Shown here one piece after another: positions 1,377-26,679 of a stretch of 64,000 nt of DNA. Every line of letters starts with the position of its first letter. Within the stretch, counting starts at the first letter, position 1. The translations under genes and the position numbers were made by a program. The stretch is from Podarcis erhardii (lineage: Eukaryota), in assembly GCA_964252035.1 (NCBI GenBank), contig OZ176205.1. One strand, 5' to 3'. The notes under the pieces are model-generated. The model did no database searches and was not told where the DNA came from. It was given only the letters and a program-made list of their open reading frames with translations.

Positions 1377-4300
1377 TATATTCTTCTTGTAATGAGCGTC
1401 CCAAAAAATGAGCAGATGAACATTCAAGCCCATTACAATCTTGGAAATTATTTTTTTATTGATTACAAAAAATAAGAAAAAATACTCTGATAGCTTTCAT
1501 AAAGGAGAAACTGGGTTATCTGGATCTCCAGCATGTCAACAAAATGACACTGAGGTGACAGGCAGATTAGAAATGTCTTCTCGTGTTGTTTTTAGCTAAC
1601 AGAAACTTTTTTTAAAAAAAAAAGTCAGGGCCAACAGGCTTCATGTTGGGCTATCATGAATTTATGTTTGTGAAGTCTGACAAGTCCTCTATTACAAAAA
1701 CATTTTCATGTCACATTCAACACATTGTGACTTTCTGTATAGTAAGAAAAACTGTTTCTCCTTTCAAAAAGAGTGCCTGAGTTAGAATATTTCCTTAGGT
1801 GATACTCAACCATTCAACAAAACATATACAAAACGGCTGCAGAATTATTCGCTAATGGGAGAAAACTCTGGCATTCTATGCTGCTTTATATGGAACTGTT
1901 CAACAGCAAAAGCAAAAACACAAAAAACCCTATAAAACCAATAGGCAGAACAGGATAATTTATGTTCCTGATGTATCTATTGACAATAATACTTACACCA
2001 TTTTAATGAATTTGCTGGTAAACTAATAGCTTCATTTCTGTTCTGCATTAACAGTATTACAGCATGTCAAATAAATCCTTGTAATGAAGTTTGATGAACA
2101 AAGATTTTGATGGCAGTGTACCATAATTATAAACATCAGCAGTATGGCTTTTTTGAATCATGAAAGGGAATGCACTTTGATGATGGCCTAGAAATTTCCT
2201 TGATTAAAATTACTGTTGACATTTCAGGCAATGGAAGTCTTCAAGTATGGCTCTGACCTTTACTCTTCAAAAATGCATCTTTTCATTAGTAAATTGCAGT
2301 ATCTTTAATCATCTAATATTAAGGACACCAAGAAACAGAAGACCATACAACTACAATTTTGATTTATATATGCAAATTTCAAGGAATCCGTTCTTCAATC
2401 CATTCTAAAAGTATTCATCCTCTAAAGAAAGGAACAACAAAAGCATCCCAATGGACAACCGCCTTTCATATGGAAAGAATCAAAAAGCTGAAGAAATAAA
2501 ATATCAGTTGGAGCAGACATTATATTATCAAGACTATAAACCATGATTTACAGTCAGGTTTCTTCTTGATAGAAGGATCATAAATTCAAAACTCAAGTTG
2601 GATCAGGTGCAAGTCTCAATATAAATCGGAAATCACCAGTCACCACTTGTACAATGTTTCCACGCATGATATCAAACACACCATGACTAGTTCACAGAGG
2701 AAAAGCTTTGCATCTATCAACATGTTATCGTGAACCATAAGCATCTTTGTAGAAAAATATGACAGATAGCAAATCTAGAGCTCATGATGAGAACAGATGT
2801 GAAACTCTGCTGCTCAAAATCTGGAGACCAGTTCTTTTTCCTATAGGTAAAATTACACATTCTTGGGTCCACAATTTTTCATTTAATTCTTTTCTGTTCC
2901 TATAATTAGACAGCTGGGTGGAACAGTTTCTTCCAAAGCTTCAGAAAGCATGTGCTGCTAGCATTCTCTACCTATGATACACATAAAGGTTAGCTCACTT
3001 TTTTCTCCTTTATCTTTCTTGAATCTCCTTTTCCTCAGCACCAGAAATCCATCAGAGTTGCCAACAGCATGCTTTGCCTAAGTCAAAGTTCATTCTGAAG
3101 ATTCTGCTACGCTTTGCCACAGTAGTCAAAGGGGCAGTTGTTTCAAAGGCCTACAGCATACAAAGGAATAGTGTGGCATGGACTACATCCAAACATGACA
3201 GTGGCATCCAAGTAATCCATTTCTCCTGTAGTGCACATCCAGGTCACATTTGAGCTGAATTAATAGACAGTCATAAATGACATGGGATACAACCTGAATC
3301 TACTTCCAATAATACAATGAACTTTCCAAGGAAACTTGAGAGTAGAAGAGGAACAAGCAGGGTGTTAAACAGAATTGCCAAACGCCATACCAAGCTTTCT
3401 GTTCCTCTCTGCAACCCTCTGCCCTGCCCCATTGCCTCTAGTATGGCCTCTACTTTCTACTCCACTATTGCAATTATTTTCCTCCCCAGAACACTGAAAC
3501 TCAAAAATATGCAAATGCTATTTCCCCTCAGTTGTGTGATCCATGCCAATTAAAAACACACTAGCAAATTTATAAACCCAGGAGAGGAGAAAATCTGAAG
3601 GTCTCTATATATACATCGCTCCCCCCCCCCCTTCTGCTAGTATTATTTCACTTTGGGGTTGCTATTGCAAGAAAAACTAAAAACTAAAGGAAAACTAAAG
3701 CCATAAACAAATACAAAAAATGGTTTGCATAAGGCAAAATTATTAAATAAATGGAAAAATATTGATTCAACTCCAGCCCTTACCAAAATGTCAGCCTCAA
3801 ATATTTTCTCGGCTTTTGAGTCAAAGATAGTTCCAACCACAGAACCATTGCAAATAAAGTGGTGACATCATTCAGGGGCCACAGAGTCAGGCAAGGATTC
3901 ATTGCAGTTATGTGGACACACCAAATGTTTCCTTAGCTCATTTGTTCTCAAGACTGAACAATGTCATCATCCTTTAAGCTCTCTTAAAATATTGAAAGAC
4001 TGAAAATTTAAAGAAATGGGCTAGCTTTTTTAAAACTCCAAAAACTTTAAAAATATAAGTAAACTTTTATAAAGCTTAAACAATAGTCATACACTACTTA
4101 ACAATTCAGATCTGTGAAGGATCTATCACCGCGATTGTTACAAAAAATGAAGTGCATGAGCTGTTTATTATAAAATACCTTGCACAAAATTATTAATTCA
4201 GCATGTAGGAAGAAAAGAAACTTTTTAATACTCACTTTGTTTGCAGAATGCTATATAACTTTCTTGGTTATGGGCAAGAATATGGAAGTCGTTTGGTTTT

Positions 4301-4408
4301 ATTATAGAAAGGAAACAAAGGCTCCTATTTTTAAATAAATTCAGTAAAAACTATTAAGTAGTCGGCCACAAAATATTTTTGGGATTTTATGTGCACAATG
4401 CTTTCAAC

Positions 4409-4411
<3 letters not shown>

Positions 4412-4461
<50 letters not shown>

Positions 4462-4470
4462 TACACATAC
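4412..4470. repeat. Compound (CT)n(AC)n microsatellite
   Basis: Read directly from the sequence. Confidence 0.95.
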
Positions 4471-4685
4471 CCTAATACTAATAGGTCTGCTTTTCCCCAC
4501 TTGCCTTTAAATAAACACATTGTTCACTACATAATTTCCAACCACATCTCAGAAATGATTGGGGCTTTTTTGTACTAACAGCTTGATTTATCAAATGATG
4601 AAGTTGGGCCATTTAGAGTTCTTCTAGGCTCAGGGAAAGGAAGATTAAGGGGGATCTAGTTACGCTCAAAACAAAAAATAAATCC

Positions 4686-4872
4686 ATCTGTTCTTAACCT
4701 GAAACTGTTCTTAACCTGAGGTACCACTTTAGCTAATGGGGCCTTCCACTGCTGCTGCGCCGCCGCCACACAATTTCTGTTCTCATCCTGAAGCAAAGTT
4801 CTTAACCCAAGGTACTATTTCTGGGTTAGCGGAGTCTGTAACCTGAAGCGTCAGTAACCCGAGGTACCACTG
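4686..4872. mobile_element. Tigger-like MITE, left end truncated (same family as 22225, 48820, 57223)
   Basis: Shares ttcttaacctgaaactgttcttaacctga ... gcggagtctgtaacctgaagc with the other copies; right TIR gaggtaccactg followed by TA. Left boundary approximate. Confidence 0.85.
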
Positions 4873-5723
4873 TAATACAATGAATCCAGTAATTTACAAC
4901 TTCCCTTGCTCAGTGGAAAATAGAGTTGGATCCAGTGAACTGTGAGCAGTTTCCCACATACACAACTGGGGTTTCTCCACACAGAATTTGTCAGTGCCCC
5001 CTTGAAAAGAGTGAGGGATATGGTGCAGTGGGCCAAAGGAAGTCAACAGTGGTCATCACCACAAGCAGAAATCCCTATCTACTCACAAAAGGCACCTCTG
5101 GATCAAACCTACACACTCCAGTATCCTACTAGCAAAAGCAGGGCTCATTGTCTTTGAACACATGCAGTGCCATCTCTTCAAAGGGGGATTATCATAATAG
5201 CCCACCCACCTACAACTGCTTGCAGTTAAATGGGTGTGAATTCCAGAATTGTTTAAGGATCGCCAATTCTCTTTTTAGAATTAAACACTAACAACTTCAT
5301 ACATAGCTTGCTGTACATTAAGAATATGCTAAGTGAGTATATACACATAGAGAGAGCTGTCCTCAGTCTTTACTGCTCAGGCATCATCTACAACTTGGTT
5401 GGTGCATGCACAGTTCCAACCCACATCTCTACATGTACTTTAATTATGGTTTGGCAGCCTGGTTCTTAGTTGCACAAAGGCTGGCTATTAAAGCATTAAT
5501 TTTCCTTTGGGAACTCAGGTCTCCAACTTCTGTTCTACAATGTAACTCACAACATGCCAAAAGGAGGTTTTTCTTAACCAGACCCATGACAATTGTGTGG
5601 TGCCACAAATGATGGGTTGTACACCTCACCCTGCACGAAGAATAAGAAGCCCCATCATTTGTAAAGTGCAACTGAATGAGGAAGAGCCACTAATACAAAT
5701 ATGAGCCAGGGAACCCATTCTAT

Positions 5724-5758
<35 letters not shown>
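5724..5758. repeat. (TAC)n microsatellite
   Basis: Read directly; it explains the poly-Thr in ORF 5701-5934. Confidence 0.95.
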
Positions 5759-6420
5759 TTATTACAACTATTGCTATTTCTATTGCTGTCCCACTGGCTT
5801 TGGTAACCTATGCCTTCTTCGCTTCTAAGAAGACATTATGGGTTTTCTTTTCTAAAGCAAACAGACACAATAATGTATTCTTCACACAGCAGAGGAAAAT
5901 ACTGTTTCACTTTTATACTGGTGCTGGTTTTTAAAGGCATAGATGGGAGATGGATGGCTATCTCCCTCTCTAATGCCTCTTACATAGGATACTCCACTGG
6001 CAAGTGAAGAGCTGTTGCTAGGCAACAATAGTATATCTGAAAGAACAATGGATCTGGAGTCCCATACATACAAAAAAGCTTCAACTGTTGCCTTCTCCCC
6101 TTATTTCCTTCCTGTCCTTTGCTCTTCTACTGTGATCCCAACACCTGGAACAAGGCCCGTATCTCTGGTAACAGAAAGTTTCTAATTATCCTAGCCTCAT
6201 CTTACCTGCTGTTCTGATGCCACCTGACACTCCCCTACCAATCTTCTTCAAAATTCACGACCTTTTCTCTAATTTCTGTCTCAATTATTAGACATAATGG
6301 CCTCTTCATACATTACAAAATTTCTGATACATTTACCAGATAAGAGAGAGATCTAAAAAATAAATAATTGATAGGATATTTATTGATGACAGCTCACTTA
6401 ACAGTGGCTAGGTTTAGGGG

Positions 6421-6817
6421 ATAAAGAAGGCTGATTGCCGAAGAATTGATGCTTCTGAATTATGGTGCTGGAGGAGACTCTTGAGAGTCCCATGGACTGC
6501 AAGAAGATCAAACCTATCCATTTTTAAAGAAACCAGCCCTGAGTGCTCACTGGAAAGACAGATCCTGAAGCTGAGATTCCAATACTTTGGCCACCTCATG
6601 AGAAGAGAAGACTCCCTGGAAAAGACTCTGATGTTGGGAAAGATAGAGGGCACAAGGAGAAGGGGACAGCAGAGGACAAGATGGTTGGACAGTGTTTTCA
6701 AAGCTACGAACATGAGTTTGACCAAACTCTGGGAGGTAGTGGAAGACAGGAGTGCCTGGCGTGCTCTGATCCATGGAGTCATGAAGAGTCGGACACGACT
6801 AAACGACTAAACAACAA
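6421..6817 (+). mobile_element. Bov-B (RTE clade) LINE, 3' terminal fragment
   Basis: Translation RVPWTARRSNLSI...LKLRFQYFGHLMRREDSLEKTLMLGKIEGTRRRGQQRTRWLD is the typical Bov-B/RTE C-terminus; ends in the gagtcggacacgactaaacgactaaacaacaa tail. Confidence 0.92.
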
Positions 6818-9800
6818 ACATGGATTATGATCAAGATGGGCAGGAGCCTAGTGACATGAGCCTTGGATACCTGACAGCAAATGCAAAGCAGGTAGGGGCT
6901 ATAGTTTTGTTGTCAGAACTAGCACCTTTTCAGTGCCTGCAAGAAAGCAAAATAGAAAAGCTTGTGCCATTTGTACACAGTTGTTCCTTTTCAAAGAAGA
7001 GCTGACTAATGGCAATGAGTGTAATGTGTTTTCTATTTGTGGTGCCAGCCTTGTTTGGCTTGCGCAAAACACAGCTCTTTCTCTGGTAAACAAATAAACT
7101 ATAAACCAGTGACCCAAAGAATCTTGGAAACTTTGCTGAAATCAAAGAGCTCCTCTCTTTGAGAACTGGAGTCTTTCAAAAGGTATTGCAGTCCAGATGC
7201 TGTATCATGGATATGCTGTTGTCATGCAGAGAGGTAATCTCTATTTTCTTGGCCATGCCTTATGTAAAAGGCTGAAGGAGAATGAATTAATTTGTTTCCT
7301 TTGTGTCCTTTTACCATCCCACCCTCAAGAGGTTCATGATGAAGCAGTATATGATTAAAAACACAAACAGAAAAGCTGTTCTTAAAGCTAAGAAAACAAA
7401 ATACCTGGCATTCGACTGAGCCAGAATAAAATGAAGTCCATTAAAGCGAAAGATAAGAAACACAGACAAAGCTGTCAGAGTGTTAAAATGACATTATTTG
7501 GAAGTTCTGGGGAGATGATGAAATAAGATGCTTGCTATAAGTTTTCTGATTAGGTGATCTATACAAACAAATAGAAGCAAAGGCTTCTAGCACTCTGTCT
7601 TCAGACAGAGGTCAACACACAGGCACTCATTTATTCAATTCAGCATTAACATCCCGCTTTTCCCTTCTGTGGAAAGCCCAAGCTGGCTGAAAACCACCAA
7701 CAATAACATAAAAAAGCAATACACACACACTGTGCACAAGTAGAATGAACTTTCATTCACACAATGGAACTTCACCTTTCTCTCCTTCCCCCCAGCAGCC
7801 CTTCAGCACCCTAAAAAATCTGCTCCAGAGAGCCTTTCCCCCTTTAAACTCCTCTGCACACAACCCAAATCTGCTTGTTGTGCTGACAAGCAACCACATT
7901 GGAATCCAACCTAAATTCACAATATTATATCATATCATCACCACACTATTGAAGTGGTAAGTATTTTATGATTTCAACAGAGAAAAATGAGGTAAGTCAA
8001 AAACAGCAGAAGATAAATACAGTAAATAAAAAAATAATTAAGAACTGAAAACAGAACAATATATAATTCAAAGGTACTTGTATTCTGAAAATGTGGGGAC
8101 TTGGTCAGTTCTCACTACTGGAAGCACCTGTTTCACTTTCATTTTATGATAGATTACAGCAGAAGTGCTAGAGAGGCTATTTTGTTTTCCTGCCTCCTTG
8201 TCTCTAGGAATGGCAGGCGAAGGCTACCAATTCACAATATGTGGATTTGTTTAGGAATTTTATAACTGAGCCTTCCACTGCATAGGGAACAGCCCAAAGC
8301 GAATATTGTTTGGGCAAAGTTATTGCTTTACACACCTTGCAATTAGGGAGGTCAGTAATTAGGTAAGGAGGATAATGTTACAGAGGGAGAAGGTGAAGGA
8401 TCTTTATGTGTGGAGTTGCCACTGGCTGTAGAACACAAATATTAAAGTGGCTTCTGGCCTGTACCCAGACAATCTGCACAAGCATTATGACCATGATCAA
8501 ATGCAGACATCTGGCAAGTCAAAGTTCAAGTCATAGCAACCCAAAAATCAAGCCATCCAGCTCAGGCTAAAAACAAAACAAAACACCCCTTCAAAGATGG
8601 ATGTCTAAGACTCTGGGATATATATGTCTCCTAGAAAGAAATCTGAAGTGTTTATGGTTTGTTTACAAAATAATGGTTTGTTCTGTTAAGCTGGAAAACT
8701 TGTTGATAACCCCAAAAAGTAAAACAGTAACAACTGTGCACTGTGGGAGAGGGAGTGCAGTAGAGATTGTGACAGTCTTTGCAAGAAGCCCACGTAGTGT
8801 GTCTTTGAAGACACATAAGAGGGCCAAAAAGCTTTATTTTTGCTTAATTTTGAGTACTAATACAGTGGTTGAAATATATTTTCTGTCTCAGAGATAAAGC
8901 AAAAGATATTACCCTGGCAATAGCTCGGCTGTGAAACCATTGCCAAATTAAAGAAAATGTTTTGCACAGCAGAATTAAATCCCACCCAACTTCATTTCTA
9001 AGAATTGGCTGGCACTGATGTTTGCTGTTCGAATATTAATTTGCAGAACAAATCCAGCCACCAAATACACTTCATTAGGGATGGTTGTAAATAAAGTCCT
9101 GATGTGATTGGTGCAGTGCAATGACATTCCTTGGGAAATACTAAATATAATTCTAAGGACTGCTTGGTTTGCTGCTGTATCCTGGCTTGCAGTCCACTAA
9201 TGAGAAAATATGAAATACAAGGACAGCCTGAACAGGCAGAAGGATGCAATGAGCCATCAACAGTAGCTGATAAAAGTGTTGGTTGTTTCACCCATTTAAG
9301 AAAAAGAAAGAACAGCCTGCACCTTTTTTACCTTCTGCATTTTTCCTAGGCCGGCACACTGCCAATCCCATAATAATGGTTTTCAAGAAATGCCCCTGAC
9401 AAACAAAGATTCTCCCTTTGCCAGATCACAGTATTTACAAGCAAGTCCAAATCTGTGAGAAAATTCAATTGAAGGCAGATGGCAGGAAATTCCTCCAAAA
9501 TGACAGTGGCCAAATGCAAACCACAAGACATGAAAATAACCCAACATACTAGACATGAAAAACATAGCTTATAGATTTTTTCCTCATGCAATTCGCAATC
9601 TGTGATTGATTACCGGGAAGACGGGCTGCAGATTTATTGGACTTCTGTAGAACAAGTATTCCATTTGCAACAATTAAACCATCCGTGGTTGAGAAACGGA
9701 TTAGAAGAGTGGAGAGGCGGTTCTGACACATAATGCATTGCTAGGAAGATGGCAAGTTCACTGCAGTGAAACAAGGCCAGGTATGCACAGACACATATGC

Positions 9801-10030
9801 CTTTTCCCACACTTACATATGTATTGCACAGCATGGGATCTGGTATGCAGTTGGGTTTCTTTCAAAACACACATGGGCACATCCACATTAAGCTTCTAGG
9901 GACATCCACATTAAGCTTCTGGCAAGTATCCAGTAATTCAGCGACATTAAAGATCACTGCATGGTGTGAATAAGTCTTTCCTTTTGCCTTTCCAGAAGAT
10001 TTCAGGATTCAGCTTTATAGGATGACCCCC

Positions 10031-10186
10031 AGCTTCTGACATTATGTTCCCCAAATCGCCATTTTCCTAAACTAACAAGCCCAAAATATTGTAACCTTTC
10101 ATCATAGGGTAGGCACCTCCATCCCCTTGATCATTTTGGTTGTCCTCTTTGGCATCTTTCCCCACCCCACAGTATCTTTTTTGAAA
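10031..10186 (-). mobile_element. CR1 LINE RT C-terminal fragment (degenerate)
   Basis: Minus-strand translation FKKDTVGWGKMPKRTTKMIKGMEV resembles the CR1 motif KKDI..LEKVQKRATKMIKGLE (recalled family motif); contains stops. Confidence 0.65.
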
Positions 10187-11151
10187 ACTGTTCACTATCT
10201 ATCAAAATAATAAATAATATAAAATTTCAATAAAGCATGGGTTTGCATATATGCATGCTCAACAAATAAGTTTAGTTCTCTTTGCCCAGCAAATGACTAG
10301 CCTTTCGGGTTGTGCTACTCTGTCTTCTGCTGAGATGGATATTGTTTCCAAAACACCAGTTCTGGAAAATCTAATCTGTTTTTAACTTTCATATCTGTGC
10401 AGGTTGGGGTCACTGAATTGGCTCATCCACCAGCTCGTCTTTTCATGTGCATGGCCACTGTAATAACTAAGGTACTTTATTTTACTTTAGACTGCTAATA
10501 AAAAGAACCTGTGTGAATGTTCAAGACAAATGTACATTCCTTTATCATTACTCATTGTGGCATCTTCTCTTTTGGCATCAAGCAAGCAGCTTTGTAGGAC
10601 AATTATTATTCCATCATTGGCAGTAAGGTACCAGTAAAAAAAAAATCCTTGCTTGTAATTCTACCCAGATCTTCCTTCATTCTGTCCAATGCTGCTCATT
10701 TCTATGTTTGGCTCTTGCATATATATATATATATTTTAAAGGCACGTGGCGGAGGGCAGTGAATGTGCAGAAGAGGAGGCTGACAAGTGCAGAGTTTGCT
10801 CCACAGAGGCTAGATTTGCCACCCCTCCCAGTTGTTGGGAGTCTGCTGCCCTGAGGCAACTGCCTCACCTCACCTCTGCGAATTTCCTGGAGGTTAAGGA
10901 TACCAACCCCAGGTTAACAACCTCCAGCAGCAAGCTCATTGTTACAACAAACATGGGTGGTTACTTCAGGTGTTGCAAAAGACAACACCCTCAGGTCTCT
11001 GGGAGAATTTAAAGAAGTGTTCTTCTCCAGGAGAAAAGCCATACTGCTGCTTTTCCTACATATCCCATGCAAATGAACAACGATTTAGCCCAACACAGGA
11101 GGACATCTTTTGCAGTGCACTTTGATACAGGATGGAATCAAGCTGGTGTTG

Positions 11152-13251
11152 TTGTTTTTTTTAAAATAATATTTATTAAGGTTTTAAAGGTTACAGATAA
11201 AACAGAAAAACACCAAATTAAACAAAAAACAAAACAATGTATCACATTAAAAAAAAGAATACCATACAAATAAAAAAAAGGAAAAAAAGATTAAGAAAAA
11301 AGGAAAAACAAAAGCAAGAAACACATCAAACCTTCACATAATATATCTTTCATTTGCTTGTTTCCTTGACCTCCTCCCACCTCCCTTTTTTGTATTCTAA
11401 TTCAGTTAGATATTTCAGCAAATCCTTTCCCTCTTTATTTTGTCCTTATAATCTATCTTAATGTACTATAATTTTACATTCTCTTCTTTCGCCAATTAAC
11501 AATCCTTTTTTTTTTTTAATCTTATTTCTCCTTAAAATTAATATATCTATTTGAACTTAAACTCTTAAAACATTTCCACTAGGGTCATAAAAATTTCATT
11601 CCACGATTTTTCTCTCCCTCATTAAATTTTTACAAAATTTCCAAATATAAACTTTAAATTCCCAATCTTCTTCCACCGTCTCCTCTCCCTGGTCTCGGCC
11701 TCTGCCGTCCCTTCTGTCAACTCCACACAGTCCATCAACCTGGAGATCTTATATCCGAGGCTCTTAACTCTTCTTCATGTCCCTTCTGCTGATCTTCTTC
11801 ATAATCTTTAGTGCTAAAAAGCAGATCTCGGGGGAGCTCCATCCCAACAATGCCTTTATTCCTTCTTAACAGGACAGCCAGATTTCCATAGTTAAAGCTA
11901 GGATCCATAAAGCATTCCAAATCTTGTTTCAAAATTCCTCCAAATCCAAAGGCCCCAAAAGCTCCAATCTCCTCCTGACCCAAATCCATATCCCAAAAGT
12001 CAATTGATCCCTGCATTGGGGAATCTCTCCAACTTTCCTTTTCCAGACCAGGCCAGGCTCCAGTCTTCAAGATCTGGCTTTTTCTAGTTTCAATCATAAA
12101 GGGCCTCAATTTGTGATCCTCAATTTGCATCTGTAAGGTTAAGGCTCCCCCTTGTATTACTTTAGGTTCAGCCACAGCAACTTTCTCCTTCTCCTTTTCA
12201 ACGATTTGTTCAGTCATAATAGATTCCTGTGCCGGATCCTTGACAACTTCTGTGTTGATGCCCACTTTTGATCCCAAGATGTCAATTTTAGTAGCCATAG
12301 CATCTATCTGTTTATGAAGCTTTTCCAACAAATAGTTTGTCTTATAAAATGCAGACACTAAATTTTCCCTAACTGACATTCTTGGGATGTTCAAGGTCAA
12401 ACTCTGGTTTCTCACAGTCCTTATCTTACAGCTGGATGCCTCCGCTCCGCTCTTGTAACAGTTTCAAAAACTCAGTCCTTTCCAACACAGTTCCAAAGGT
12501 GAAAAATAGTATCAATTTTCAGTTACTTTTTCTTCTTTTAAAACACAGAAGCGGACAATGGAAACAGTATCTTTCTCTTGTAGCTAGCTGTCAAATATGT
12601 ACTGTTCACCGTCAATTGACTTTTTCCTTTTTTTTCTTTTTGCAGCCCGTTCCCAGGTTCAGAGACATGGTAATTTAGTTTTCCACTCTCTCCTGCAGGC
12701 ACGCTTGGTCAAAATTTCCCCCCTCTTCCCCTGCTTCCAAGGGGAGTTTAATAGTTTCAATCAATGGAAGTTTGATCCATTACATGGATCTTTCCAAAAC
12801 CTTAGCTTACGAATACTGTGCTTCAGTCTATTTACAAAAAGGGGAGACGGACTTCCTGTTTTGAGCCTTCCCCGTTCGATGCCGAATTAAGGTATTTAGA
12901 AATCCAATTTTCCGTTCTACTCACGGGTTGTTATTTAAAATCCAATTGTCCACAGGAAAAAGTCAGCGCTCTCCGACAGCAGCAATGCGGCTTCACTCCG
13001 TGAAAGAAGCGGTTGATTCAAAGCACCGTGCCACTCACCCCACGTCGCTCTGGATTCCCGATACCGGGTCTCCCCATGAGTAGGGGGGCGCAAAAGGTGC
13101 CAGCTGAATCCCAAGTTCACAGGCTCTTCCGCCTGTGATTTTCAAGGGTCTCCGCCTTCGCCGTGGCGGTTCAGCCCCTGCTTTCCACGGAGCAAGTTCC
13201 TCCCGATCGGAGGAGCTCCGCCATTGCCGGAGGCGCTAACCTGGAAGTCTC
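11152..13251 (-). mobile_element. Full-length non-autonomous L1-derived (HAL1-like) retrotransposon, about 2.1 kb
   Basis: 18-bp TSD ggaatcaagctggtgttg (11134-11151 and 13252-13269). GC-rich 5' UTR starts agacttcc with a YY1-like CGCCAT core at 13219-13224. One long ORF; RDQGEETVEEDW remnant resembling the lizard L1 ORF2 C-terminus; T-rich 3' UTR, AATAAA and A-rich tail. No RT or endonuclease. Confidence 0.85.
11735..12379 (-). CDS. 214-aa ORF of the HAL1-like element (coiled-coil, ORF1-like N-terminus)
   Basis: ATG at 12379 (MSVRENL) aligns with the ATG of the second copy. Heptad-like LEKLHKQIDAMATKIDILGSKV; 61 of 100 aligned residues identical to ORF 18015-18347 by manual alignment. Confidence 0.7.
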   Translation of the reverse strand: MSVRENLVSAFYKTNYLLEKLHKQIDAMATKIDILGSKVGINTEVVKDPAQESIMTEQIVEKEKEKVAVAEPKVIQGGALTLQMQIEDHKLRPFMIETRKSQILKTGAWPGLEKESWRDSPMQGSIDFWDMDLGQEEIGAFGAFGFGGILKQDLECFMDPSFNYGNLAVLLRRNKGIVGMELPRDLLFSTKDYEEDQQKGHEEELRASDIRSPG

Positions 13252-13794
13252 GGAATCAAGCTGGTGTTGCTCCACTAAAGGAAGGCATCTGTCCATGGAA
13301 TATGGAGAAGCCATTCAGATAAATTACTCCTTCCTCTGCAACCCCCACCCCTCCAAAAAAAAAACTGATGTAAAGAGCTGCAGAACCCTCCAGAGCAGAT
13401 TTGGGGGCCTCTGTGCTGCAGAATCTCCCTTCTGCTTTCAGTTGCAATTTCAGTTACAATTCTATGATCACAGACTTCCCACACTTTATTTTATAATCAC
13501 TCAATGAGAGCAGGGTTTATCACAATGTGTGAGATATAGTTCAATATATGACTGGAGTTAATGAAACATAAAATGAGTGATAAGTAATCTTTATTGCTTT
13601 GCAGTTTGCTTTGGTTCCCATGAAACCTAGTATTCCATGGCTCTTGCATTTTCTTGGTCTTTTGGCTCCATAATGTAAAACTTTATTTTCTCTTTTTACA
13701 CTTGTGTGTGAGGGGTGGGGTGCGGAGAGAAATTAGATATTCAACCAATGTGTTATACACAATCCCCATTTTAGGGGAGCATTTCATGCATATA

Positions 13795-13852
13795 ATGAAG
13801 TGGGCTCTAACACATGAAAGCTTATGAAACAATAAATATTAGTTTTTAAGGA
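13795..13852 (+). mobile_element. Decayed Penelope-like 3' end with hammerhead remnant
   Basis: gaagtgggctctaacacatgaaagcttatg...aataaa resembles a reptile PLE terminus as I recall it (stem II-GAAA-AGCT-T-ATG); the CUGA core is lost. Confidence 0.45.
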
Positions 13853-17630: not shown

Positions 17631-17961
17631 TTGAATCTAGGCACACACCCTAACTGCAAACATGCATCTTCAGGGGAAGTATATCCCCATCTAGTACAGA
17701 CTGAATCCCTATTCTTGTTCTACTTTCTGCCTATTCAAGAGTACCTCTGTCTTGTCTGGATTAGGTTTGTTCACCCTCTGTTCACCCTCATCCAGTCCAT
17801 CACTGATGGTAGACACTGCTTTAGAACCAGTTATTTACAGAGGGATTTATAACAGCCACTGAAGGTGGGAGGCATAAACTAGGTCCCCTCCTGTCTCCTT
17901 GGCCACCACTCAGTGGCTTGTAGCATATTGTGCAGCACCATTGAGAAACCACTGTTTTCCA

Positions 17962-18767
17962 GCTGCAAGATAAGAGACTGTGAGAATCAGGGATTGACCT
18001 TGGACTATTTGAGAATGTCGACAGAAGAAACTTTAGTGATTGTATTATGCAAGATAAGTCACTCGTTGGAACAACTCCACAAGAAGACAGATGTCATGAC
18101 TACTAAAATTGATAACTTGGGACAAAAAGTGACTAACTTGGGACAAAAAGTGGCTATCAATACAGAAATTATTCAGGATCTGATACAGGAATCTACTTTG
18201 ACAGGGCAAATTGTTGAGAAGGCAAAGGAGAAAGTTGCTGTTGTTGAACCTAAAGTAATACAAGTGGGAGTCCCAGCCTTACAGAGGCAAATTAAGGACT
18301 ATAAATTGAGGCCTTTTATGACTGATTTTAGAAAAATGTTGGAATGAAATCTTATGGCTTTAGTTGAAATGTTATAAGGAGTTAAGCATAAATAAGCATT
18401 ATAGTATTAATGGAAAATAAGGGTAAAAATGAGTTAAGATATTTATATCACAGAAAACAGAGAAAGATGGAAAGGAATTGCTGAAACAATTAATAGAAGT
18501 GGAATACAAAAAGGGAGGTGAGAGGAGGTCGATGAAACAAGGGTATGAAAGATAGACTACTGAAATGGTACAATGTATGTTTTTAAATTGTTTTTGTTTT
18601 GTTTTGTTTAGGTTAATGTTGTGTTTTGTTTTGTTTAGATTATATTATATATTGTATTGTATTTTTTCCCCTTTTTGTTGTTTTTTTCTTTTTGTCTTTT
18701 TTTCTTCTTTTTCTTTTTTGTAAGTTCTAAAAGTAATAAATATTATTATTTTTTTTTAAAAAAAAGA
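17962..18767 (+). mobile_element. Second, 5'-truncated and internally shorter copy of the HAL1-like family
   Basis: 19-bp TSD gagaaaccactgttttcca (17943-17961 and 18768-18786). ORF and 3' UTR (ggaatgaaat...gaatacaaaaagggaggtg.gaggaggtc) are homologous to the 11152-13251 element; AATAAA plus A tail. Confidence 0.85.
18015..18347 (+). CDS. 110-aa coiled-coil ORF of the second HAL1-like copy
   Basis: MSTEETL...KLRPFMTDFRKMLE*; open frame with an in-frame 21-nt duplication (18113-18152). Confidence 0.65.
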   Translation: MSTEETLVIVLCKISHSLEQLHKKTDVMTTKIDNLGQKVTNLGQKVAINTEIIQDLIQESTLTGQIVEKAKEKVAVVEPKVIQVGVPALQRQIKDYKLRPFMTDFRKMLE

Positions 18768-21700
18768 GAGAAACCACTGTTTTCCAAGTCTTTGTCTAGA
18801 TATATAGACTGCAAAATCCAATGCATGTGGATGGAACAGTAGACTTTCCATAAGAGGTAGAGATGGATGGACAAAACGAACAAGCACCGTTATATCAGCA
18901 CTGTTATATCAGTGAGGCCATGAAGATTGACAGCTGGAACAAGGTGTTTATGTTGGATGCTAAAGGGGACGGGGACCTTGTGGAAGGCTCTGAGGACTAG
19001 CACAATACAGCCCAACCTATTCTTCTTTCCACTTAAAAACCTAGCTTACCGACCTATTCCCAAGTTAAACAAAATTAAGTGGACCTTAAAAAAAAAAAAG
19101 AAATACAAAAGGAAAGGAAATGCCACAATTCTCCATCTTTAAGTATTCTTGAGACACTCTCCTTGGCACAAATGATACAAGCCGGCTCTGTAGCAAGGAG
19201 AATTGCTTGTTTAGAGTCTAATCAGAATTTGTTTTTCTGACTAAACAGATTATGACATGGGAATAAACAAAATACAGTTAATTTTGGGCTCTGCTCCTTT
19301 GACTAGACAGGTCTCCCAGGGCTTGGATCCCTCAGTGATGCTCTTTGACCTCAAGGCTTTGTTTTGCCTCAGACCGCACATCTGTTCCCTTTCTTTTCCT
19401 CCCAACAGGACCATTCAAGAACAGGACGTGCTGCCTGCCTCTGTGTCTCACGCATCTCTTTCCAAATTCACAGATTAGAGGGTGAAGGAGGCAGAGAAAG
19501 GAAGAACTTACAAGACTGGTGCCTGGTTCAGCCTTCCCAATTCATTCTGACTTTTAGTGGTACCTCATGACTTTTTTAGCATATCTCTTTGCATCAGTGT
19601 AGAAATTTGAATGTGTTCCTCTTACCCTGACTGTTCCAGATCATGTTAGGAAGCATCCTAAATTCCAATTTAAGTCATAAACTCTTCAACAGCTACCTGG
19701 CATGATGGCTGACTACTGCTTCCACAATTAGAGGCAGCATGCCTCTGCATACCTGTTGTTGGGGAACAACAGTGTGAGGCAGCTATTGTATCAAGGTCCT
19801 GCTTCTAAGCTTCCTTTAGGCATCTAACTGGTCACTGTGGTAAGCAGGATGCAGGTCTAGATAGGTTTTTAGCCTGGTACATTAGGTCTCAAAAAGAGAC
19901 CTGTTGTATTACGCTATTGGTATATATTGGTGGTTTTATAGTGGGTTTCTAATCGTTTTTATTTTTACATATGCAAACAGACCTTTTTCTTATGATCTAT
20001 CCTGCTGGCTGTGGCTGTTAGGAATCTGAATCCAACAACAACTGGACAGTACAAGGTTGGCCACCCCATTGTGATTTTAAACTTCAATCCTATCCCAATC
20101 TAAATCCCCCCCCCCCGAAGTGGCTATTAGATTGCAGCAGGACAGGGGACATCCTTCTTTTTTCTGTAATGGGAAGCAGCTTCAGGTCTATTTTGATAAA
20201 TACTCTCCCTCAACTAGTTCTGCTCCAAGTTTTTTTTTTAAGCAGTTGTTGTCCTTCATGGTACTATTAAACTGATGTTGTGGTGGTGGAAGAATAGTTG
20301 GGAGATTCAACTGCAGATCCTCCCTCTTGTGTCTCTTTGTGCCCTCAGTTGGGACTCACTGGGCGACGACAGCACTATACAAGGACAACGTACAAAGTTT
20401 GTTCACTTATTATAGACACAGTAAGGGCAATCACAATACTTTTGTAAAACACTGACATGAGACTTTGTTGTGATCACTAGCATGTAACTCTCAGAGTAGC
20501 TTCCAGCCTCAGAGATCTTTTGATCAGAAAAAAATGTATATTTCTAAAATCTTTGACTGAACCTCCCCTGTAAATATAATTCACAAATAAATTTATAATT
20601 TATAATAGAATTTATCATCAAAGTCCTTTACCAAGAGTCCAATTGACGAGCCTCTTCATACCTATGGATCTCAGTCTTCCAAGATTAATCCATCACACCC
20701 TGAAGAAAAAATGTAGAAAGGAAGAAACCAGTAACAAAGTGGCTTCATGGAGACAAAAGGAAGTCTTACCACCACACAGCAAAGGCAACAGATATCCTTT
20801 GTGAGGTAGTACAAATACTGCAGTCATACACCAAGGTAAGATCCGCTTTAGTGATAAAAGACAGTAAAGCCTAGAAGACTCCATTAGGGAGTCATTCTTC
20901 CAAACAACAGGGGAAGCAATAATTTTCTACATCATGCTTTCTCAAAACCTGCAGACACAACACTGAAAGCCGGTACAGGTCAGCAATAAATCAACTTCAC
21001 ATCATAAGAACTATTTTTAAAAAATTCAAGATGTTCAAAAGTGCTTTCCCACCATTCAGCAGAAATTGAATCAAGATGCAACCAGCACTGAATAAAGATC
21101 TTGGAGGAAAAAACCCAATAACATATTTCTAATTGATCCCTATTGGTAAGATAGTTTGTGGAGCATTATTTCCACAACAGAAACAGTCTATGACAACCTA
21201 ACTCAGCCTTCTCCAAGTTAGTGCTCTCCAGATGTTTTGGATTTTAATTACCATCTGCCCCATCCAGCATGGTCAAGATGGCTGAAGCTGACGGCACTCA
21301 TAGTCCAAAACATGTGGAGGGTACCAGGTTGGGGGAAGCTGACCTAAGCAGATAGCCTTGGGTTGTGTGTGGAAATCTCATTGTGCAATTAAAATAAAAC
21401 CCTCACAATATCTTTAAAGGATCATCCAAAGCTATGTAAGAAGGGTATTTGTTGATTTCACTGTTTGTTTACCAAGAAAATCTGGCAGACTTGAGATGAA
21501 AGTGATAGAGAAGCCAGAGGTTAGAATAAATCTGTGAACCAAACACAGAATTAAAAAAAACAAAGGCCATTTGCTGCTCATATTTTTAATACCTCCCCTT
21601 CATACCTTCCCCAGACTTTTCTTATTTCCCATCATATCATGGTATTCCCAGATGAAATAATAAATCCTTTCAAAATTGTCTCATTCTCTCCTAAAGCCTG

Positions 21701-25087: not shown

Positions 25088-25125
25088 GTATGAGCTTTCG
25101 TGTGCATGCACACTTCTTCAGATAC
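25088..25125 (-). ncRNA. Minimal type I hammerhead ribozyme motif (PLE-associated)
   Basis: Exact reverse complement of 26860-26897. Confidence 0.75.
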
Positions 25126-26679
25126 ACTGAAACAGAAGTCACCGGACCTTTCTATATAGTGAGAAGGTGGGGAGGGGTATTACTCAGAAGGGTGGTGGGA
25201 ATGGGTGATTGGCAGATAGCTGCGATGAGCCTGTTGACGACTCTACGTGACACCACAGATTTTCTGAGGAAAATACAATCTTTAAATAATCTTCCCAACA
25301 ATACTATACTAGCTACTATGGATGTGGAATCTCTGTATACCAACATCCCACACAACGATGGTTTACAAGCTATAAGGAATACCATTTCAGATAAAACCAC
25401 AGCGGACTTTGCTACCAAACTCTGCCAATTTGTCCTTACCCACAACAACTTCAAATTCGGTGATGACCTGTTCCTTCAGATCAGCGGCACAGCAATGGGC
25501 ACCCGCATGGCCCCACAGTATGCCAACATCTTCATGGCGGATTTAGAACAACGTTTCCTAAACTCCTACCCACTCAAACCTCTCTTGTACCTGCGATACA
25601 TTGATGATATTTTTATCATCTGGACACATGGTCAACAGACCCTGGACACCTTCCACCAGAAATTCAATGATTTTCACCCCACCATCAACCTAACAATGAA
25701 TCAATCTATGCAAGAAATACATTTTTTGGACACTACTATAAAAATACAGGATGGGCGCATAGACACCACCTTATACCGTAAACCAACTGACCGACAAACA
25801 TATCTACATGCCTCTAGCTACCATCCCAAACATACCAAACAGTCCATTGTATATAGCCAGGCACTACGTTACAGCCGCATCTGCTCCAATTCTACAGACA
25901 GAGACTCTCACCTAAGAGATCTACAGCAAACCTTTTTAAAACTAAAATACCCAGCAGATGAAGTTAGACAACAGATCAACAGAGCCAGACTGATACCCAG
26001 AGAGAACTTGCTGCAAGACAGACCCAAAAAAGAAAATAACAGAACACCTCTAGTCATCACATACAGCTCCCAAGTTAAAACAGTACAACGCATCATCAGA
26101 GATCTACAACCTCTCCTGGACAATGACAGTTCTCTTTCTCAAGCTCTGGGAGGAAGACCTTTCATTGCCTACAGACAGCCACCCAGTCTTAAACAACTCC
26201 TAACCCACAATAATACTACAACCAGACCTAACACGGACACTGGCACCAGAGCCTGCAATAAACCCAGATGCCAACTTTGCTGCCACATACACCCGGACAA
26301 CACCATTACTGGCCCCAACAACATCACACATACCATCTCGGGACTATTTAATTGCTCATCGTCTAACATTGTGTATGCCATAAAATGCCAACAGTGTCCT
26401 TCAGCTCTCTATATTGGACAAACAGGCCAGACCTTACGCCAAAGAATAAACGGACATAAATCCGACATCAGGAACCACAAGACAGAAAAACCAGTAGGAG
26501 AACACTTCAATCTCCCAGGACATTCTATACAAGATCTCAAAGTAGCTGTTCTATTACAAAGGAATTTCAGAAATAGACTGGAAAGAGAAGCTGCTGAATT
26601 GCAACTTATCACCAAACTTAAAACTATGGAGAGACCTGGTTTGAACAAAGACATTGGATTCTTATCTCATTATACATGA
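25090..26679 (+). CDS. PLE reverse transcriptase-Zn knuckle-GIY-YIG endonuclease (N-terminally truncated; first ~52 aa derive from the inverted 3' UTR)
   Basis: RT motifs MDVESLYTNIP, GTAMGTRMAPQYANIFM and YLRYIDDIFIIW; thumb LYRKPT...HP; Cys linker CNKPRCQLC...CSS..VYAIKCQQC; YIGQT...LRQRINGH and C-terminal E...GLN. No internal stops. Confidence 0.93.
   Translation: MSFRVHAHFFRYTETEVTGPFYIVRRWGGVLLRRVVGMGDWQIAAMSLLTTLRDTTDFLRKIQSLNNLPNNTILATMDVESLYTNIPHNDGLQAIRNTISDKTTADFATKLCQFVLTHNNFKFGDDLFLQISGTAMGTRMAPQYANIFMADLEQRFLNSYPLKPLLYLRYIDDIFIIWTHGQQTLDTFHQKFNDFHPTINLTMNQSMQEIHFLDTTIKIQDGRIDTTLYRKPTDRQTYLHASSYHPKHTKQSIVYSQALRYSRICSNSTDRDSHLRDLQQTFLKLKYPADEVRQQINRARLIPRENLLQDRPKKENNRTPLVITYSSQVKTVQRIIRDLQPLLDNDSSLSQALGGRPFIAYRQPPSLKQLLTHNNTTTRPNTDTGTRACNKPRCQLCCHIHPDNTITGPNNITHTISGLFNCSSSNIVYAIKCQQCPSALYIGQTGQTLRQRINGHKSDIRNHKTEKPVGEHFNLPGHSIQDLKVAVLLQRNFRNRLEREAAELQLITKLKTMERPGLNKDIGFLSHYT

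What the first reader, a model, noticed from the sequence alone, without database searches (positions are those of the whole stretch)
11134..13269. Protein-coding non-autonomous L1-derived retrotransposon family with a conserved coiled-coil ORF and no RT/EN
Seen: a 2.1-kb unit with an 18-bp TSD, CpG-rich 5' UTR, one 214-aa ORF and an A-rich tail, plus a second copy 4.7 kb away with its own 19-bp TSD. The two ORFs start at the same ATG, are about 61% identical over 100 aligned residues and are both stop-free. Known: long TSDs and A tails mark L1-type target-primed reverse transcription, and HAL1 elements encode only ORF1p. Inference: this is a lizard lineage that borrows L1 ORF2p in trans while keeping its own coiled-coil protein under selection. 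That protein could be an RNP chaperone, or a partner or dominant-negative of L1 ORF1p trimers. I see no canonical ORF1 RRM motif (RRNNLRI.G) in it, so it may differ from a standard HAL1.
Basis: partly seen in the sequence, partly recalled or inferred. Interest (0 to 1): 0.75.

Follow-up and report, generated by a model that had tools for sequence, protein, structure and literature searches.

The report
Lizard half-L1 retroposon with mini-ORF1
This is one copy of an abundant lizard jumping gene that derives from LINE-1, has lost the copying enzyme, and still carries a shrunken LINE-1 ORF1 protein that appears to be kept by selection; the kind is known from mammals (HAL1), but the shrunken protein is a variant.

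Summary
Window 11152-13251 (minus strand) is a 2.1-kb retroposed unit between exact 18-bp target-site duplications. It has a CpG-rich 5' UTR, one 214-aa ORF, a 583-nt 3' UTR, AATAAA and a short A tail. A second copy (17962-18767, plus strand) has its own exact 19-bp duplication; it is 5'-truncated and internally deleted.

Contigs from four related organisms pile up by the thousand exactly within the element, while the flanks stay single-copy. It is therefore a high-copy family.

The ORF is not a new protein. Profile comparison (97.9%, E 3e-13, 197 columns) shows it is collinear with lizard L1 ORF1p, whose model matches the human LINE-1 ORF1p trimer. It lacks two coiled-coil heptads, the RRM core (about 40 aa) and 17 aa of the CTD.

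Seven relatives of 199-215 aa, only 30-58% identical, share the start, the end and these deletions. Neutral simulation never keeps such an ORF open. Heptad core positions and the last 31 residues are selectively conserved.

No RT/EN is present, so mobilisation by L1 ORF2p in trans is inferred. It is HAL1-like but of independent origin, with an eroded ORF1p. Other windows of this scan already hold the family. Interest is moderate.

The parts
11134..11151 (.). target-site duplication of copy 1, 3' side of the element (18 bp, exact)
   Evidence: read; identical to 13252-13269; repeat pile-up starts at 11135-11152
11152..11734 (-). 3' UTR of copy 1 (583 nt; A 36%, T 36%). It ends in AATAAA (11172-11177 on plus) and an A8CAA tail (11152-11162). 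The first ~140 nt hold a 47-codon stop-free frame that might be an ORF2 3' tip; this is untested.
   Evidence: 70-73% identical to 18330-18747 of copy 2
11735..12379 (-). mini-ORF1: 214 codons plus stop. It holds the coiled coil (about residues 3-40 modelled as an in-register parallel trimer), eroded RRM beta1-alpha1-beta2, CTD remnants and a conserved C-terminal tail.
12380..13251 (-). 5' UTR of copy 1 (872 nt). The 5'-most 400 nt (12852-13251) are CpG-rich and are the presumed internal promoter. It has only 5 upstream ATG against 16 expected.
   Evidence: many contigs of other copies reach this same 5' end (bin 13168-13274)
13252..13269 (.). target-site duplication of copy 1, 5' side of the element (18 bp, exact)
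17943..17961 (.). target-site duplication of copy 2, 5' side (19 bp, exact)
   Evidence: family D17
17962..18767 (+). Copy 2 of the family (806 nt). It is 5'-truncated 57 nt before the ATG and carries an internal deletion of about 466 nt. Its ORF (18015-18347) encodes 110 aa, the coiled-coil part only. It has a 21-nt tandem duplication at 18113-18154, AATAAA and an A-rich tail. Identity to copy 1 is 70-74%.
18768..18786 (.). target-site duplication of copy 2, 3' side (19 bp, exact)
   Evidence: family D17

Best explanation
Copy 1 is a full-length member, and copy 2 a truncated and deleted member, of a high-copy non-autonomous retroposon family of lacertid-type lizards.

The family arose once from an L1 element by loss of ORF2 (endonuclease and reverse transcriptase). 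It keeps an L1-style CpG-rich 5' UTR (presumed internal promoter), a shrunken ORF1 and a polyadenylated 3' UTR.

**Shown**
- The anatomy, the copy abundance and the homology of the ORF to lizard L1 ORF1p.
- The three in-frame deletions: two coiled-coil heptads, the RRM core beta3-alpha2-beta4, and 17 aa of the CTD.
- The ORF stays open across 30-58% identical lineages.

**Inferred**
- The RNA is transcribed from its own 5' UTR and translated into the mini-ORF1p.
- The mini-ORF1p trimerises through its N-terminal coiled coil.
- The RNA is then reverse-transcribed at a nicked target by ORF2p supplied in trans by an autonomous L1 (target-primed reverse transcription). This gives the 18-19-bp duplications, the A tails and the 5' truncation.
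- The protein probably helps its own RNA in cis to form or join an RNP that captures ORF2p. Its most conserved parts are the heptad core and the last 31 residues, not the RNA-binding RRM.
For: **Anatomy and insertion marks**
- Exact TSDs of 18 and 19 bp, AATAAA plus an A tail, and 5' truncation in copy 2.
- No other sense ORF above 68 codons in 2.1 kb.

**Family**
- 1,631 to 10,566 contigs per run, from four organisms, lie on 11135-13274 at 80% likeness or more.
- Summed word depth there is 1e2 to 1e5 times that of the flanks, which are single-copy.

**Origin**
- HMMER over 1.84 billion proteins finds short relatives and ~350-aa lizard proteins.
- P0015's best solved relative is human LINE-1 ORF1p, by sequence (E 0.005) and by fold (2ykp, E 2.7e-10, top 11 hits).
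- hhalign of short family against lizard ORF1p: 97.9%, E 3.2e-13, 197 columns, collinear.

**Selection**
- Seven full-length members of 199-215 aa at 30-58% identity share the start, the ...ASD..PG end and all three deletions.
- 0 of 800 neutrally evolved ORFs stay open at any of these identities.
- Heptad a/d positions are 89% hydrophobic against 31% elsewhere (p 9e-18). The last 31 residues are 59% identical pairwise against 31-35% elsewhere.
- Coiled-coil indels are exact multiples of 7 aa.
- The 5' UTR is depleted of ATG: 5 against 16 expected, P about 0.001.

**Trimer**
- Three copies of residues 1-110 score 0.46 against a best control of 0.00. That mark was reached by 21 of 30 solved homo-pairs and 0 of 23 single chains.
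- Partner pLDDT was at least 41 and run agreement at least 33%. The interface is in register at residues 3-40.
Against: - No proper codon-model test was therefore possible.
- The only pair available gives omega 0.41 (bootstrap 0.22-0.72). Shifted frames of the same alignment give 0.40-0.66, and differences per codon position are 18/27/27. That test has no discriminating power here.
- Protein databases hold only called ORFs, so open copies are ascertained preferentially.
- The AF2 monomer is confident only for helix 2-43 (mean pLDDT 41). The C-terminal two thirds may be disordered.
- The trimer pass may partly be memory of solved ORF1p or of generic coiled coils.
- UTR modules are far deeper than the ORF body, and internally deleted variants exist (tables 2 and 5; copy 2). 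Copies can therefore spread, or at least insert, without the full ORF.
- No RNA run holds the stretch, so expression is unknown.
- The partner L1 was not identified, and neither target site is a clean TT/AAAA.
Confidence: 0.75

Rival explanations
1. The ORF is a passive relic. The family spreads as RNA alone, as SVA or other non-coding L1 dependents do, and the ORF is open only in young copies because it has not yet had time to decay.
For: - Internally deleted and ORF-less variants exist (copy 2; joints table 5).
- UTR modules are 5-40 times deeper than the ORF body.
- Pairwise dN/dS is not distinguishable from shifted-frame controls.
- The seven listed differences between this copy and most others are 5 non-synonymous to 2 synonymous, close to neutral.
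- An earlier scan note reports a non-coding relative in this genome (s1-259098; unchecked).
Against: - Seven lineages at 30-58% identity all keep the same start, the same stop and the in-frame deletions.
- Neutral simulation gives 0/800 open.
- The heptad core and the C-terminal tail are selectively conserved.
- Of 11 clusters found at 50% identity, most are full length, where neutrality predicts almost none.
Confidence: 0.12
2. The mini-ORF1p works against or on L1, not for its own RNA. It forms mixed trimers with L1 ORF1p through the coiled coil, either to ride in L1 RNPs or to poison them as a dominant negative.
For: - The coiled coil is retained and homologous to that of co-resident L1 ORF1p (38-49% identity to P0012).
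- The RNA-binding RRM core is gone, so the protein may not bind RNA itself.
- The model supports self-association.
Against: - The short family lacks two heptads of the L1 coiled coil. Its coiled coil is only about 35% identical even within the family, which argues for homotypic and not heterotypic pairing.
- No heterotrimer was modelled, and no co-resident L1 sequence from this genome was available.
- A dominant negative would harm the element's own supply of ORF2p.
Confidence: 0.1
3. The copies are processed retrocopies of a host gene that was domesticated from L1 ORF1 (in the way of L1TD1), not a transposon family of its own.
For: A single ORF with UTRs, a poly(A) signal, an A tail and TSDs is also the anatomy of a processed retrocopy.
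Against: - Thousands of contigs per genome lie on it, with subfamily-level divergence.
- Many copies reach the same CpG-rich 5' end, which points to an internal promoter carried along.
- Relatives differ by up to 70% in protein, which is not expected of retrocopies of one gene.
Confidence: 0.02
4. The family is mobilised by a LINE clade other than L1 that also makes A tails and TSDs.
For: - The partner was not identified.
- The target sites (gag/CAACAC and att/GAGAAA) are not clean TT/AAAA.
- Squamate genomes hold many LINE clades (PMC3787681, abstract).
Against: - The ORF is L1 ORF1-derived.
- Long 18-19-bp TSDs, AATAAA plus an A tail, and 5' truncation are the L1 pattern (established knowledge).
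- Earlier scan notes report L1-type ends for this family (unchecked).
Confidence: 0.04

Closest known systems
HAL1 (half-L1) non-autonomous L1 derivatives of mammals (Smit 1999; Bao and Jurka 2010, as cited in PMC5753468)
   Same: - Derived from L1.
- Keeps the 5' UTR, an ORF1 and a polyadenylated 3' end, and has lost ORF2.
- Amplified to high copy number, presumably by L1 ORF2p in trans.
- PMC5753468 states that HAL1 arose independently several times.
   Different: - Independent origin from a lizard L1.
- The ORF1 is not a complete ORF1p. It has lost two heptads, the RRM core (beta3-alpha2-beta4) and 17 aa of the CTD, and its beta1 signature is degenerate.
- Pfam sees no domain in it.
- I recall that mammalian HAL1 ORF1p is full-length, but I did not test this here.
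L1 ORF1p (human 2ykp/2ldy; lizard proteins P0015, P0019-P0036)
   Same: - N-terminal parallel trimeric coiled coil.
- Collinear remnants of the RRM and CTD.
- Same position in the element, directly after a CpG-rich 5' UTR.
   Different: - 214 aa against about 350 aa.
- Lacks the N-terminal ~50-residue basic/disordered region, 14 aa of coiled coil, about 40 aa of RRM and 17 aa of CTD.
- Invariant RRM residues of the lizard ORF1p alignment (for example R208 D209 C210 L211 of P0015) fall in the deleted part.
- The best conserved part is a C-terminal tail ending ...ASD..PG, which L1 ORF1p has only in loose form.
Non-coding L1-dependent retroposons (SVA, processed pseudogenes, L1 internal-deletion copies)
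   Same: Same insertion marks (TSD, A tail, 5' truncation) and the same presumed dependence on ORF2p in trans.
   Different: These carry no conserved protein of their own. Here the ORF is kept open over deep divergence.

Membership tests
HAL1-type (ORF1-only) L1 derivative | The ORF is homologous to L1 ORF1p | tested here: met
   hhalign of A2 against A3: 97.9%, E 3.2e-13, 197 columns. The A3 member P0015 matches human LINE-1 ORF1p by sequence and by fold.
HAL1-type (ORF1-only) L1 derivative | No ORF2 (endonuclease / reverse transcriptase) | tested here: met
   The element is 2,100 nt. The only sense stop-free stretch above 68 codons is the ORF itself. tblastn with all fetched proteins finds nothing outside the ORF.
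HAL1-type (ORF1-only) L1 derivative | L1-type insertion marks: long TSD, poly(A) signal and A tail, frequent 5' truncation | tested here: met
   TSDs of 18 and 19 bp, both exact. AATAAA plus A8 in copy 1 and an A-rich tail in copy 2. Copy 2 is 5'-truncated.
HAL1-type (ORF1-only) L1 derivative | Amplified as a family of its own, with a shared structure of single origin | tested here: met
   Thousands of contigs in four organisms lie within the element's borders. All full-length relatives share the three deletions relative to ORF1p.
HAL1-type (ORF1-only) L1 derivative | Encodes a complete ORF1p (coiled coil + RRM + CTD) | tested here: not met
   The RRM core and part of the CTD are deleted (mapped on the P0015 model). 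There is no Pfam hit. In the AF2 model, residues 41-214 are below pLDDT 50.
HAL1-type (ORF1-only) L1 derivative | Mobilised by L1 ORF2p in trans | not testable with these tools
   This needs a retrotransposition assay. It is inferred here from the insertion marks only.
HAL1-type (ORF1-only) L1 derivative | Match to a described Repbase/Dfam family | not testable with these tools
   No repeat library is at hand. Paper searches found no lizard HAL1 description.
L1 ORF1p / Pfam Transposase_22 | Reaches the Pfam gathering score | tested here: not met
   No hit for the window ORF or its relatives. The bona fide lizard ORF1p set also gets no Pfam hit, so this test is insensitive in lizards.
L1 ORF1p / Pfam Transposase_22 | Trimeric parallel coiled coil | tested here: met
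   Score 0.46 against a best control of 0.00. The mark was reached by 21/30 solved homo-pairs and 0/23 single chains. pLDDT was at least 41 and run agreement at least 33%. Heptad core positions are 89% hydrophobic in seven members. This is model support, not proof.
Processed retrocopy of a host gene | Few copies, all derived from one intron-bearing parent gene | tested here: not met
   High copy number and deep subfamily divergence.

The most novel reading that the evidence does not exclude
The mini-ORF1p is a new kind of retroposon protein and not merely a decayed ORF1p. It has shed the RNA-binding RRM, yet it keeps under selection a short trimeric coiled coil and a strongly conserved C-terminal tail (R-D...K...G...A-S-D..P-G). 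Through these it would dock onto the L1 machinery (ORF1p trimers, ORF2p or a host factor). That would be parasitism of L1 at the protein level, beyond simple RNA competition for ORF2p.
Probability: 0.2. Interest if true: 0.65.

Novelty: new variant of a known kind. Interest (0 to 1): 0.42.

Why it matters
ORF1-only L1 derivatives have so far been described in mammals. They bear on an open question: what ORF1p contributes to retrotransposition in cis, as opposed to ORF2p.

This lizard family has pared ORF1p down to a coiled coil, fragments of the RRM and CTD, and a conserved tail, yet it stays open over deep divergence. It is a natural deletion experiment that points to the parts of ORF1p a parasite of L1 cannot do without. 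It also gives a testable system: mobilise the element with and without the ORF, and with or without the tail.

For genome annotation it explains a set of 'hypothetical proteins' in Podarcis gene sets (for example P0013).

Tried and rejected
**Searches on the window ORF that found nothing**
- Pfam.
- PDB phmmer and PDB profile search.
- Word-indexed protein search.
- ESM Atlas (best score 0.75, below use).
- Only the full HMMER scan found relatives.

**Other searches that found nothing**
- Rfam and tRNA scans of the element. The 5' UTR is therefore not a tRNA/7SL-type SINE head.
- JGI metagenome scan for DNA of relatives.
- tblastn of all fetched proteins against the UTRs. No ORF2 remnant could be shown.

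**Steps that could not be done or were inconclusive**
I have no DNA of relatives, no lizard L1 DNA for comparing UTRs, and no codon-model test.
- dN/dS on the two window copies gave 0.41, but shifted frames gave 0.40-0.66. I rejected it as evidence either way.
- A profile word search returned only three proteins, so it is no census.
I repeated it by reference.
- The AF2 monomer of the mini-ORF1p was too poor (pLDDT 41) to send to a fold search.
- No heterotrimer with L1 ORF1p was modelled, because the one complex job went to the likeliest case, the homotrimer.
Full report
**Observation**

Read on the minus strand, window 13251 to 11152 is a 2,100-nt unit flanked by the same 18-mer at 13252-13269 and 11134-11151. 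In order it holds:
- an 872-nt 5' UTR, whose first 400 nt carry 27 CpG (GC 0.48-0.61, CpG observed/expected 0.74-1.17);
- one ORF of 214 codons from the ATG at 12379 to the stop at 11735-11737;
- a 583-nt A/T-rich 3' UTR that ends in AATAAA and A8CAA.

No other sense frame is open for more than 68 codons, so there is no room for an endonuclease or reverse transcriptase.

A second copy lies 4.67 kb away on the plus strand (17962-18767), between exact 19-bp duplications (D17).
- It is 70-74% identical in DNA to copy 1.
- It starts 57 nt before the same ATG.
- It lacks about 466 nt, so its ORF stops after 110 codons.
- It ends in AATAAA and an A-rich tail.

**It is a family, and a large one**

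Logan contigs of four runs from four coded organisms were laid on 10600-13800 at 80% likeness or more.
- Flanks carry one contig each, with summed word depth of about 7-100.
- From 11135 to 13274, between 1,631 and 10,566 contigs per run pile up, with summed depths of 1e2 to 2e6.
- The steps fall exactly at the TSD borders.
- The tool warns that this is no copy number, so I say only 'hundreds to thousands of copies'.

Organism A matches the flanks without a difference, so it is presumably the source species. Organism B differs by about 1%. In both, a contig runs from the left flank 25-28 nt into the element, so the insertion is shared.

In organism E (flanks about 4-6% different) one contig stops at 11151. 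Another starts at 13252 with 12 unaligned letters in front. That is 12 + 18 = 30 = k-1, which is what an empty site would give, but I could not see the letters. This is suggestive only.

Within the element, three bins are 5-40 times deeper than the ORF body: 11349-11455, 11670-11776 and 12847-13060. Contigs with internal deletions also occur (table 5). The UTR modules are therefore shared with other, more numerous relatives.

**What the ORF is**

Pfam, PDB, the word-indexed search and the Atlas gave nothing. The exhaustive HMMER scan found 15 proteins of two kinds.

*Short proteins of 199-215 aa.* These match end to end at 30-58% identity: P0001, P0002 with P0016-18, P0004, P0009, P0013, and later P0038. 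P0013 is a 'hypothetical protein' of Podarcis lilfordi.

*Lizard proteins of about 350 aa.* These match the N-terminal half: P0015, P0007, P0012, P0014. They are L1 ORF1p:
- UniRef names one relative 'L1 transposable element RRM domain-containing'.
- P0015's best solved relative by sequence is human LINE-1 ORF1p, collinear over RRM and CTD (E 0.005).
- Its AF2 model (mean pLDDT 68; helix 57-152, then a beta-alpha-beta-beta-alpha-beta RRM and a CTD) has the human ORF1p trimer as its top eleven fold matches (2ykp, E 2.7e-10).

A profile of the short family against a profile of 17 lizard ORF1p gives 97.9% probability and E 3.2e-13 over 197 collinear columns. Mapped on P0015, the short protein lacks four parts:
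- the first ~50 residues;
- 14 residues of coiled coil;
- residues about 205-244, which are RRM strands beta3 and beta4 and helix alpha2, including residues invariant in lizard ORF1p;
- residues about 283-299 of the CTD.

The beta1 signature (K-Q-T-N-L-R-I-R-A-V-P-E in L1) is degenerate in the window copy. All full-length short relatives share these deletions, so the family has a single origin.

**Is the ORF kept by selection?**

The direct test is weak. The only DNA pair I have (copy 1 against copy 2, 101 codons) gives dN/dS 0.41 (bootstrap 0.22-0.72). The two shifted frames give 0.40 and 0.66, and differences per codon position are 18/27/27. I do not count this either way.

The indirect evidence is stronger.
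- Seven lineages only 30-58% identical keep the same start, the same end and an open frame.
- When the window ORF is evolved neutrally to those identities, 0 of 800 replicates stay open at any level.
- The core heptad positions 7, 11, 14, 18, 21, 25, 28, 32, 35 and 39 are hydrophobic in 62 of 70 cells, against 60 of 196 at other positions of residues 3-40 (p 9e-18). This holds although that segment is only 35% identical pairwise.
- The last 31 residues are 59% identical pairwise against 31-35% elsewhere, and they hold 9 of the 12 invariant columns.
- Coiled-coil length changes are exact heptad multiples: 14 aa against L1, and a 21-nt tandem duplication in copy 2.
- The 5' UTR holds 5 ATG against 16 expected from shuffles.

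Two caveats apply. Protein databases list only called ORFs, although the same search also returned truncated members (P0003, P0005, P0006, P0010), and these are the minority. Conservation of the tail could also be partly at the nucleotide level, since that bin is deeper.

The window copy itself looks like a decaying insertion. The seven listed ORF differences from most other copies are 5 non-synonymous to 2 synonymous.

**How it most likely works**

*Shown:* a promoter-like CpG-rich 5' UTR that many copies reach, one ORF1-derived ORF, a poly(A) signal and tail, long TSDs, and 5' truncation.

*Inferred:* transcription from the element's own 5' UTR, translation of the mini-ORF1p, and target-primed reverse transcription by ORF2p of an autonomous L1.

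The N-terminus is modelled as an in-register parallel three-stranded coiled coil over residues 3-40:
- score 0.46, best control 0.00;
- the mark was reached by 21 of 30 solved homo-pairs and 0 of 23 single chains;
- partner pLDDT at least 41, run agreement at least 33%;
- the job used three copies, unlike the calibration.

The rest of the monomer is not confidently folded (pLDDT below 50 from residue 41). With the RRM core gone, classical ORF1p RNA binding is doubtful. What selection preserves is the trimer and the tail. I therefore favour a cis-acting helper that marks or packages its own RNA for ORF2p capture. A partner or poison of L1 ORF1p remains a minority alternative.

**Comparison with what is known, and novelty**

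The closest known kind is HAL1, the ORF1-only L1 derivative of mammals, which arose several times (PMC5753468). This family meets the defining points that I could test: L1-derived ORF, no ORF2, L1 insertion marks, and its own amplification. It fails one, a complete ORF1p.

It is of independent, squamate origin. Paper searches found no description of it, and Repbase and Dfam could not be consulted.

Earlier notes of this scan describe the same family in other windows of this genome. My tests agree with them independently. Hence the rating: a real feature, a new variant of a known kind, of moderate interest.

Noticed in passing
window 25090-26679 (+): A 529-aa ORF with a reverse transcriptase domain (RVT_1, E 4e-12) and a GIY-YIG nuclease domain (E 2e-5). 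This is a Penelope-like element with a long open frame.
   Followed up: no
proteins P0014 and P0020 (Podarcis muralis gene models, not in the window): These gene models are named TRIM39-like. They carry RING and B-box domains, followed by the end of the coiled coil, the RRM and the CTD of lizard L1 ORF1p (61% identical to P0015 over 70% of it). This is either an annotation artefact or a TRIM-ORF1p fusion worth a look as a possible L1 restriction factor.
   Followed up: no
window 11349-11455, 11670-11776 and 12847-13060: These three stretches of the element are 5-40 times deeper in contigs of other copies than the ORF body. They seem to be modules shared with more abundant relatives, such as autonomous L1 or non-coding derivatives.
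   Followed up: partly
window 11596-11740 (-): A 47-codon stop-free frame lies directly after the ORF, in another frame. It could be the ORF2 3' tip that earlier scan notes report for this family. No lizard ORF2 sequence was at hand to test it.
   Followed up: partly
window 18113-18154 (+): A 21-nt tandem duplication (95% identical) in the ORF of copy 2 adds exactly one heptad to the coiled coil (D13).
   Followed up: yes
window 11151/13252, organism E: In one related organism the contigs stop and restart exactly at the TSD edges, with 12 unaligned letters (12 + 18 = k-1). This suggests the site is empty there, so the insertion would be younger than that split.
   Followed up: partly
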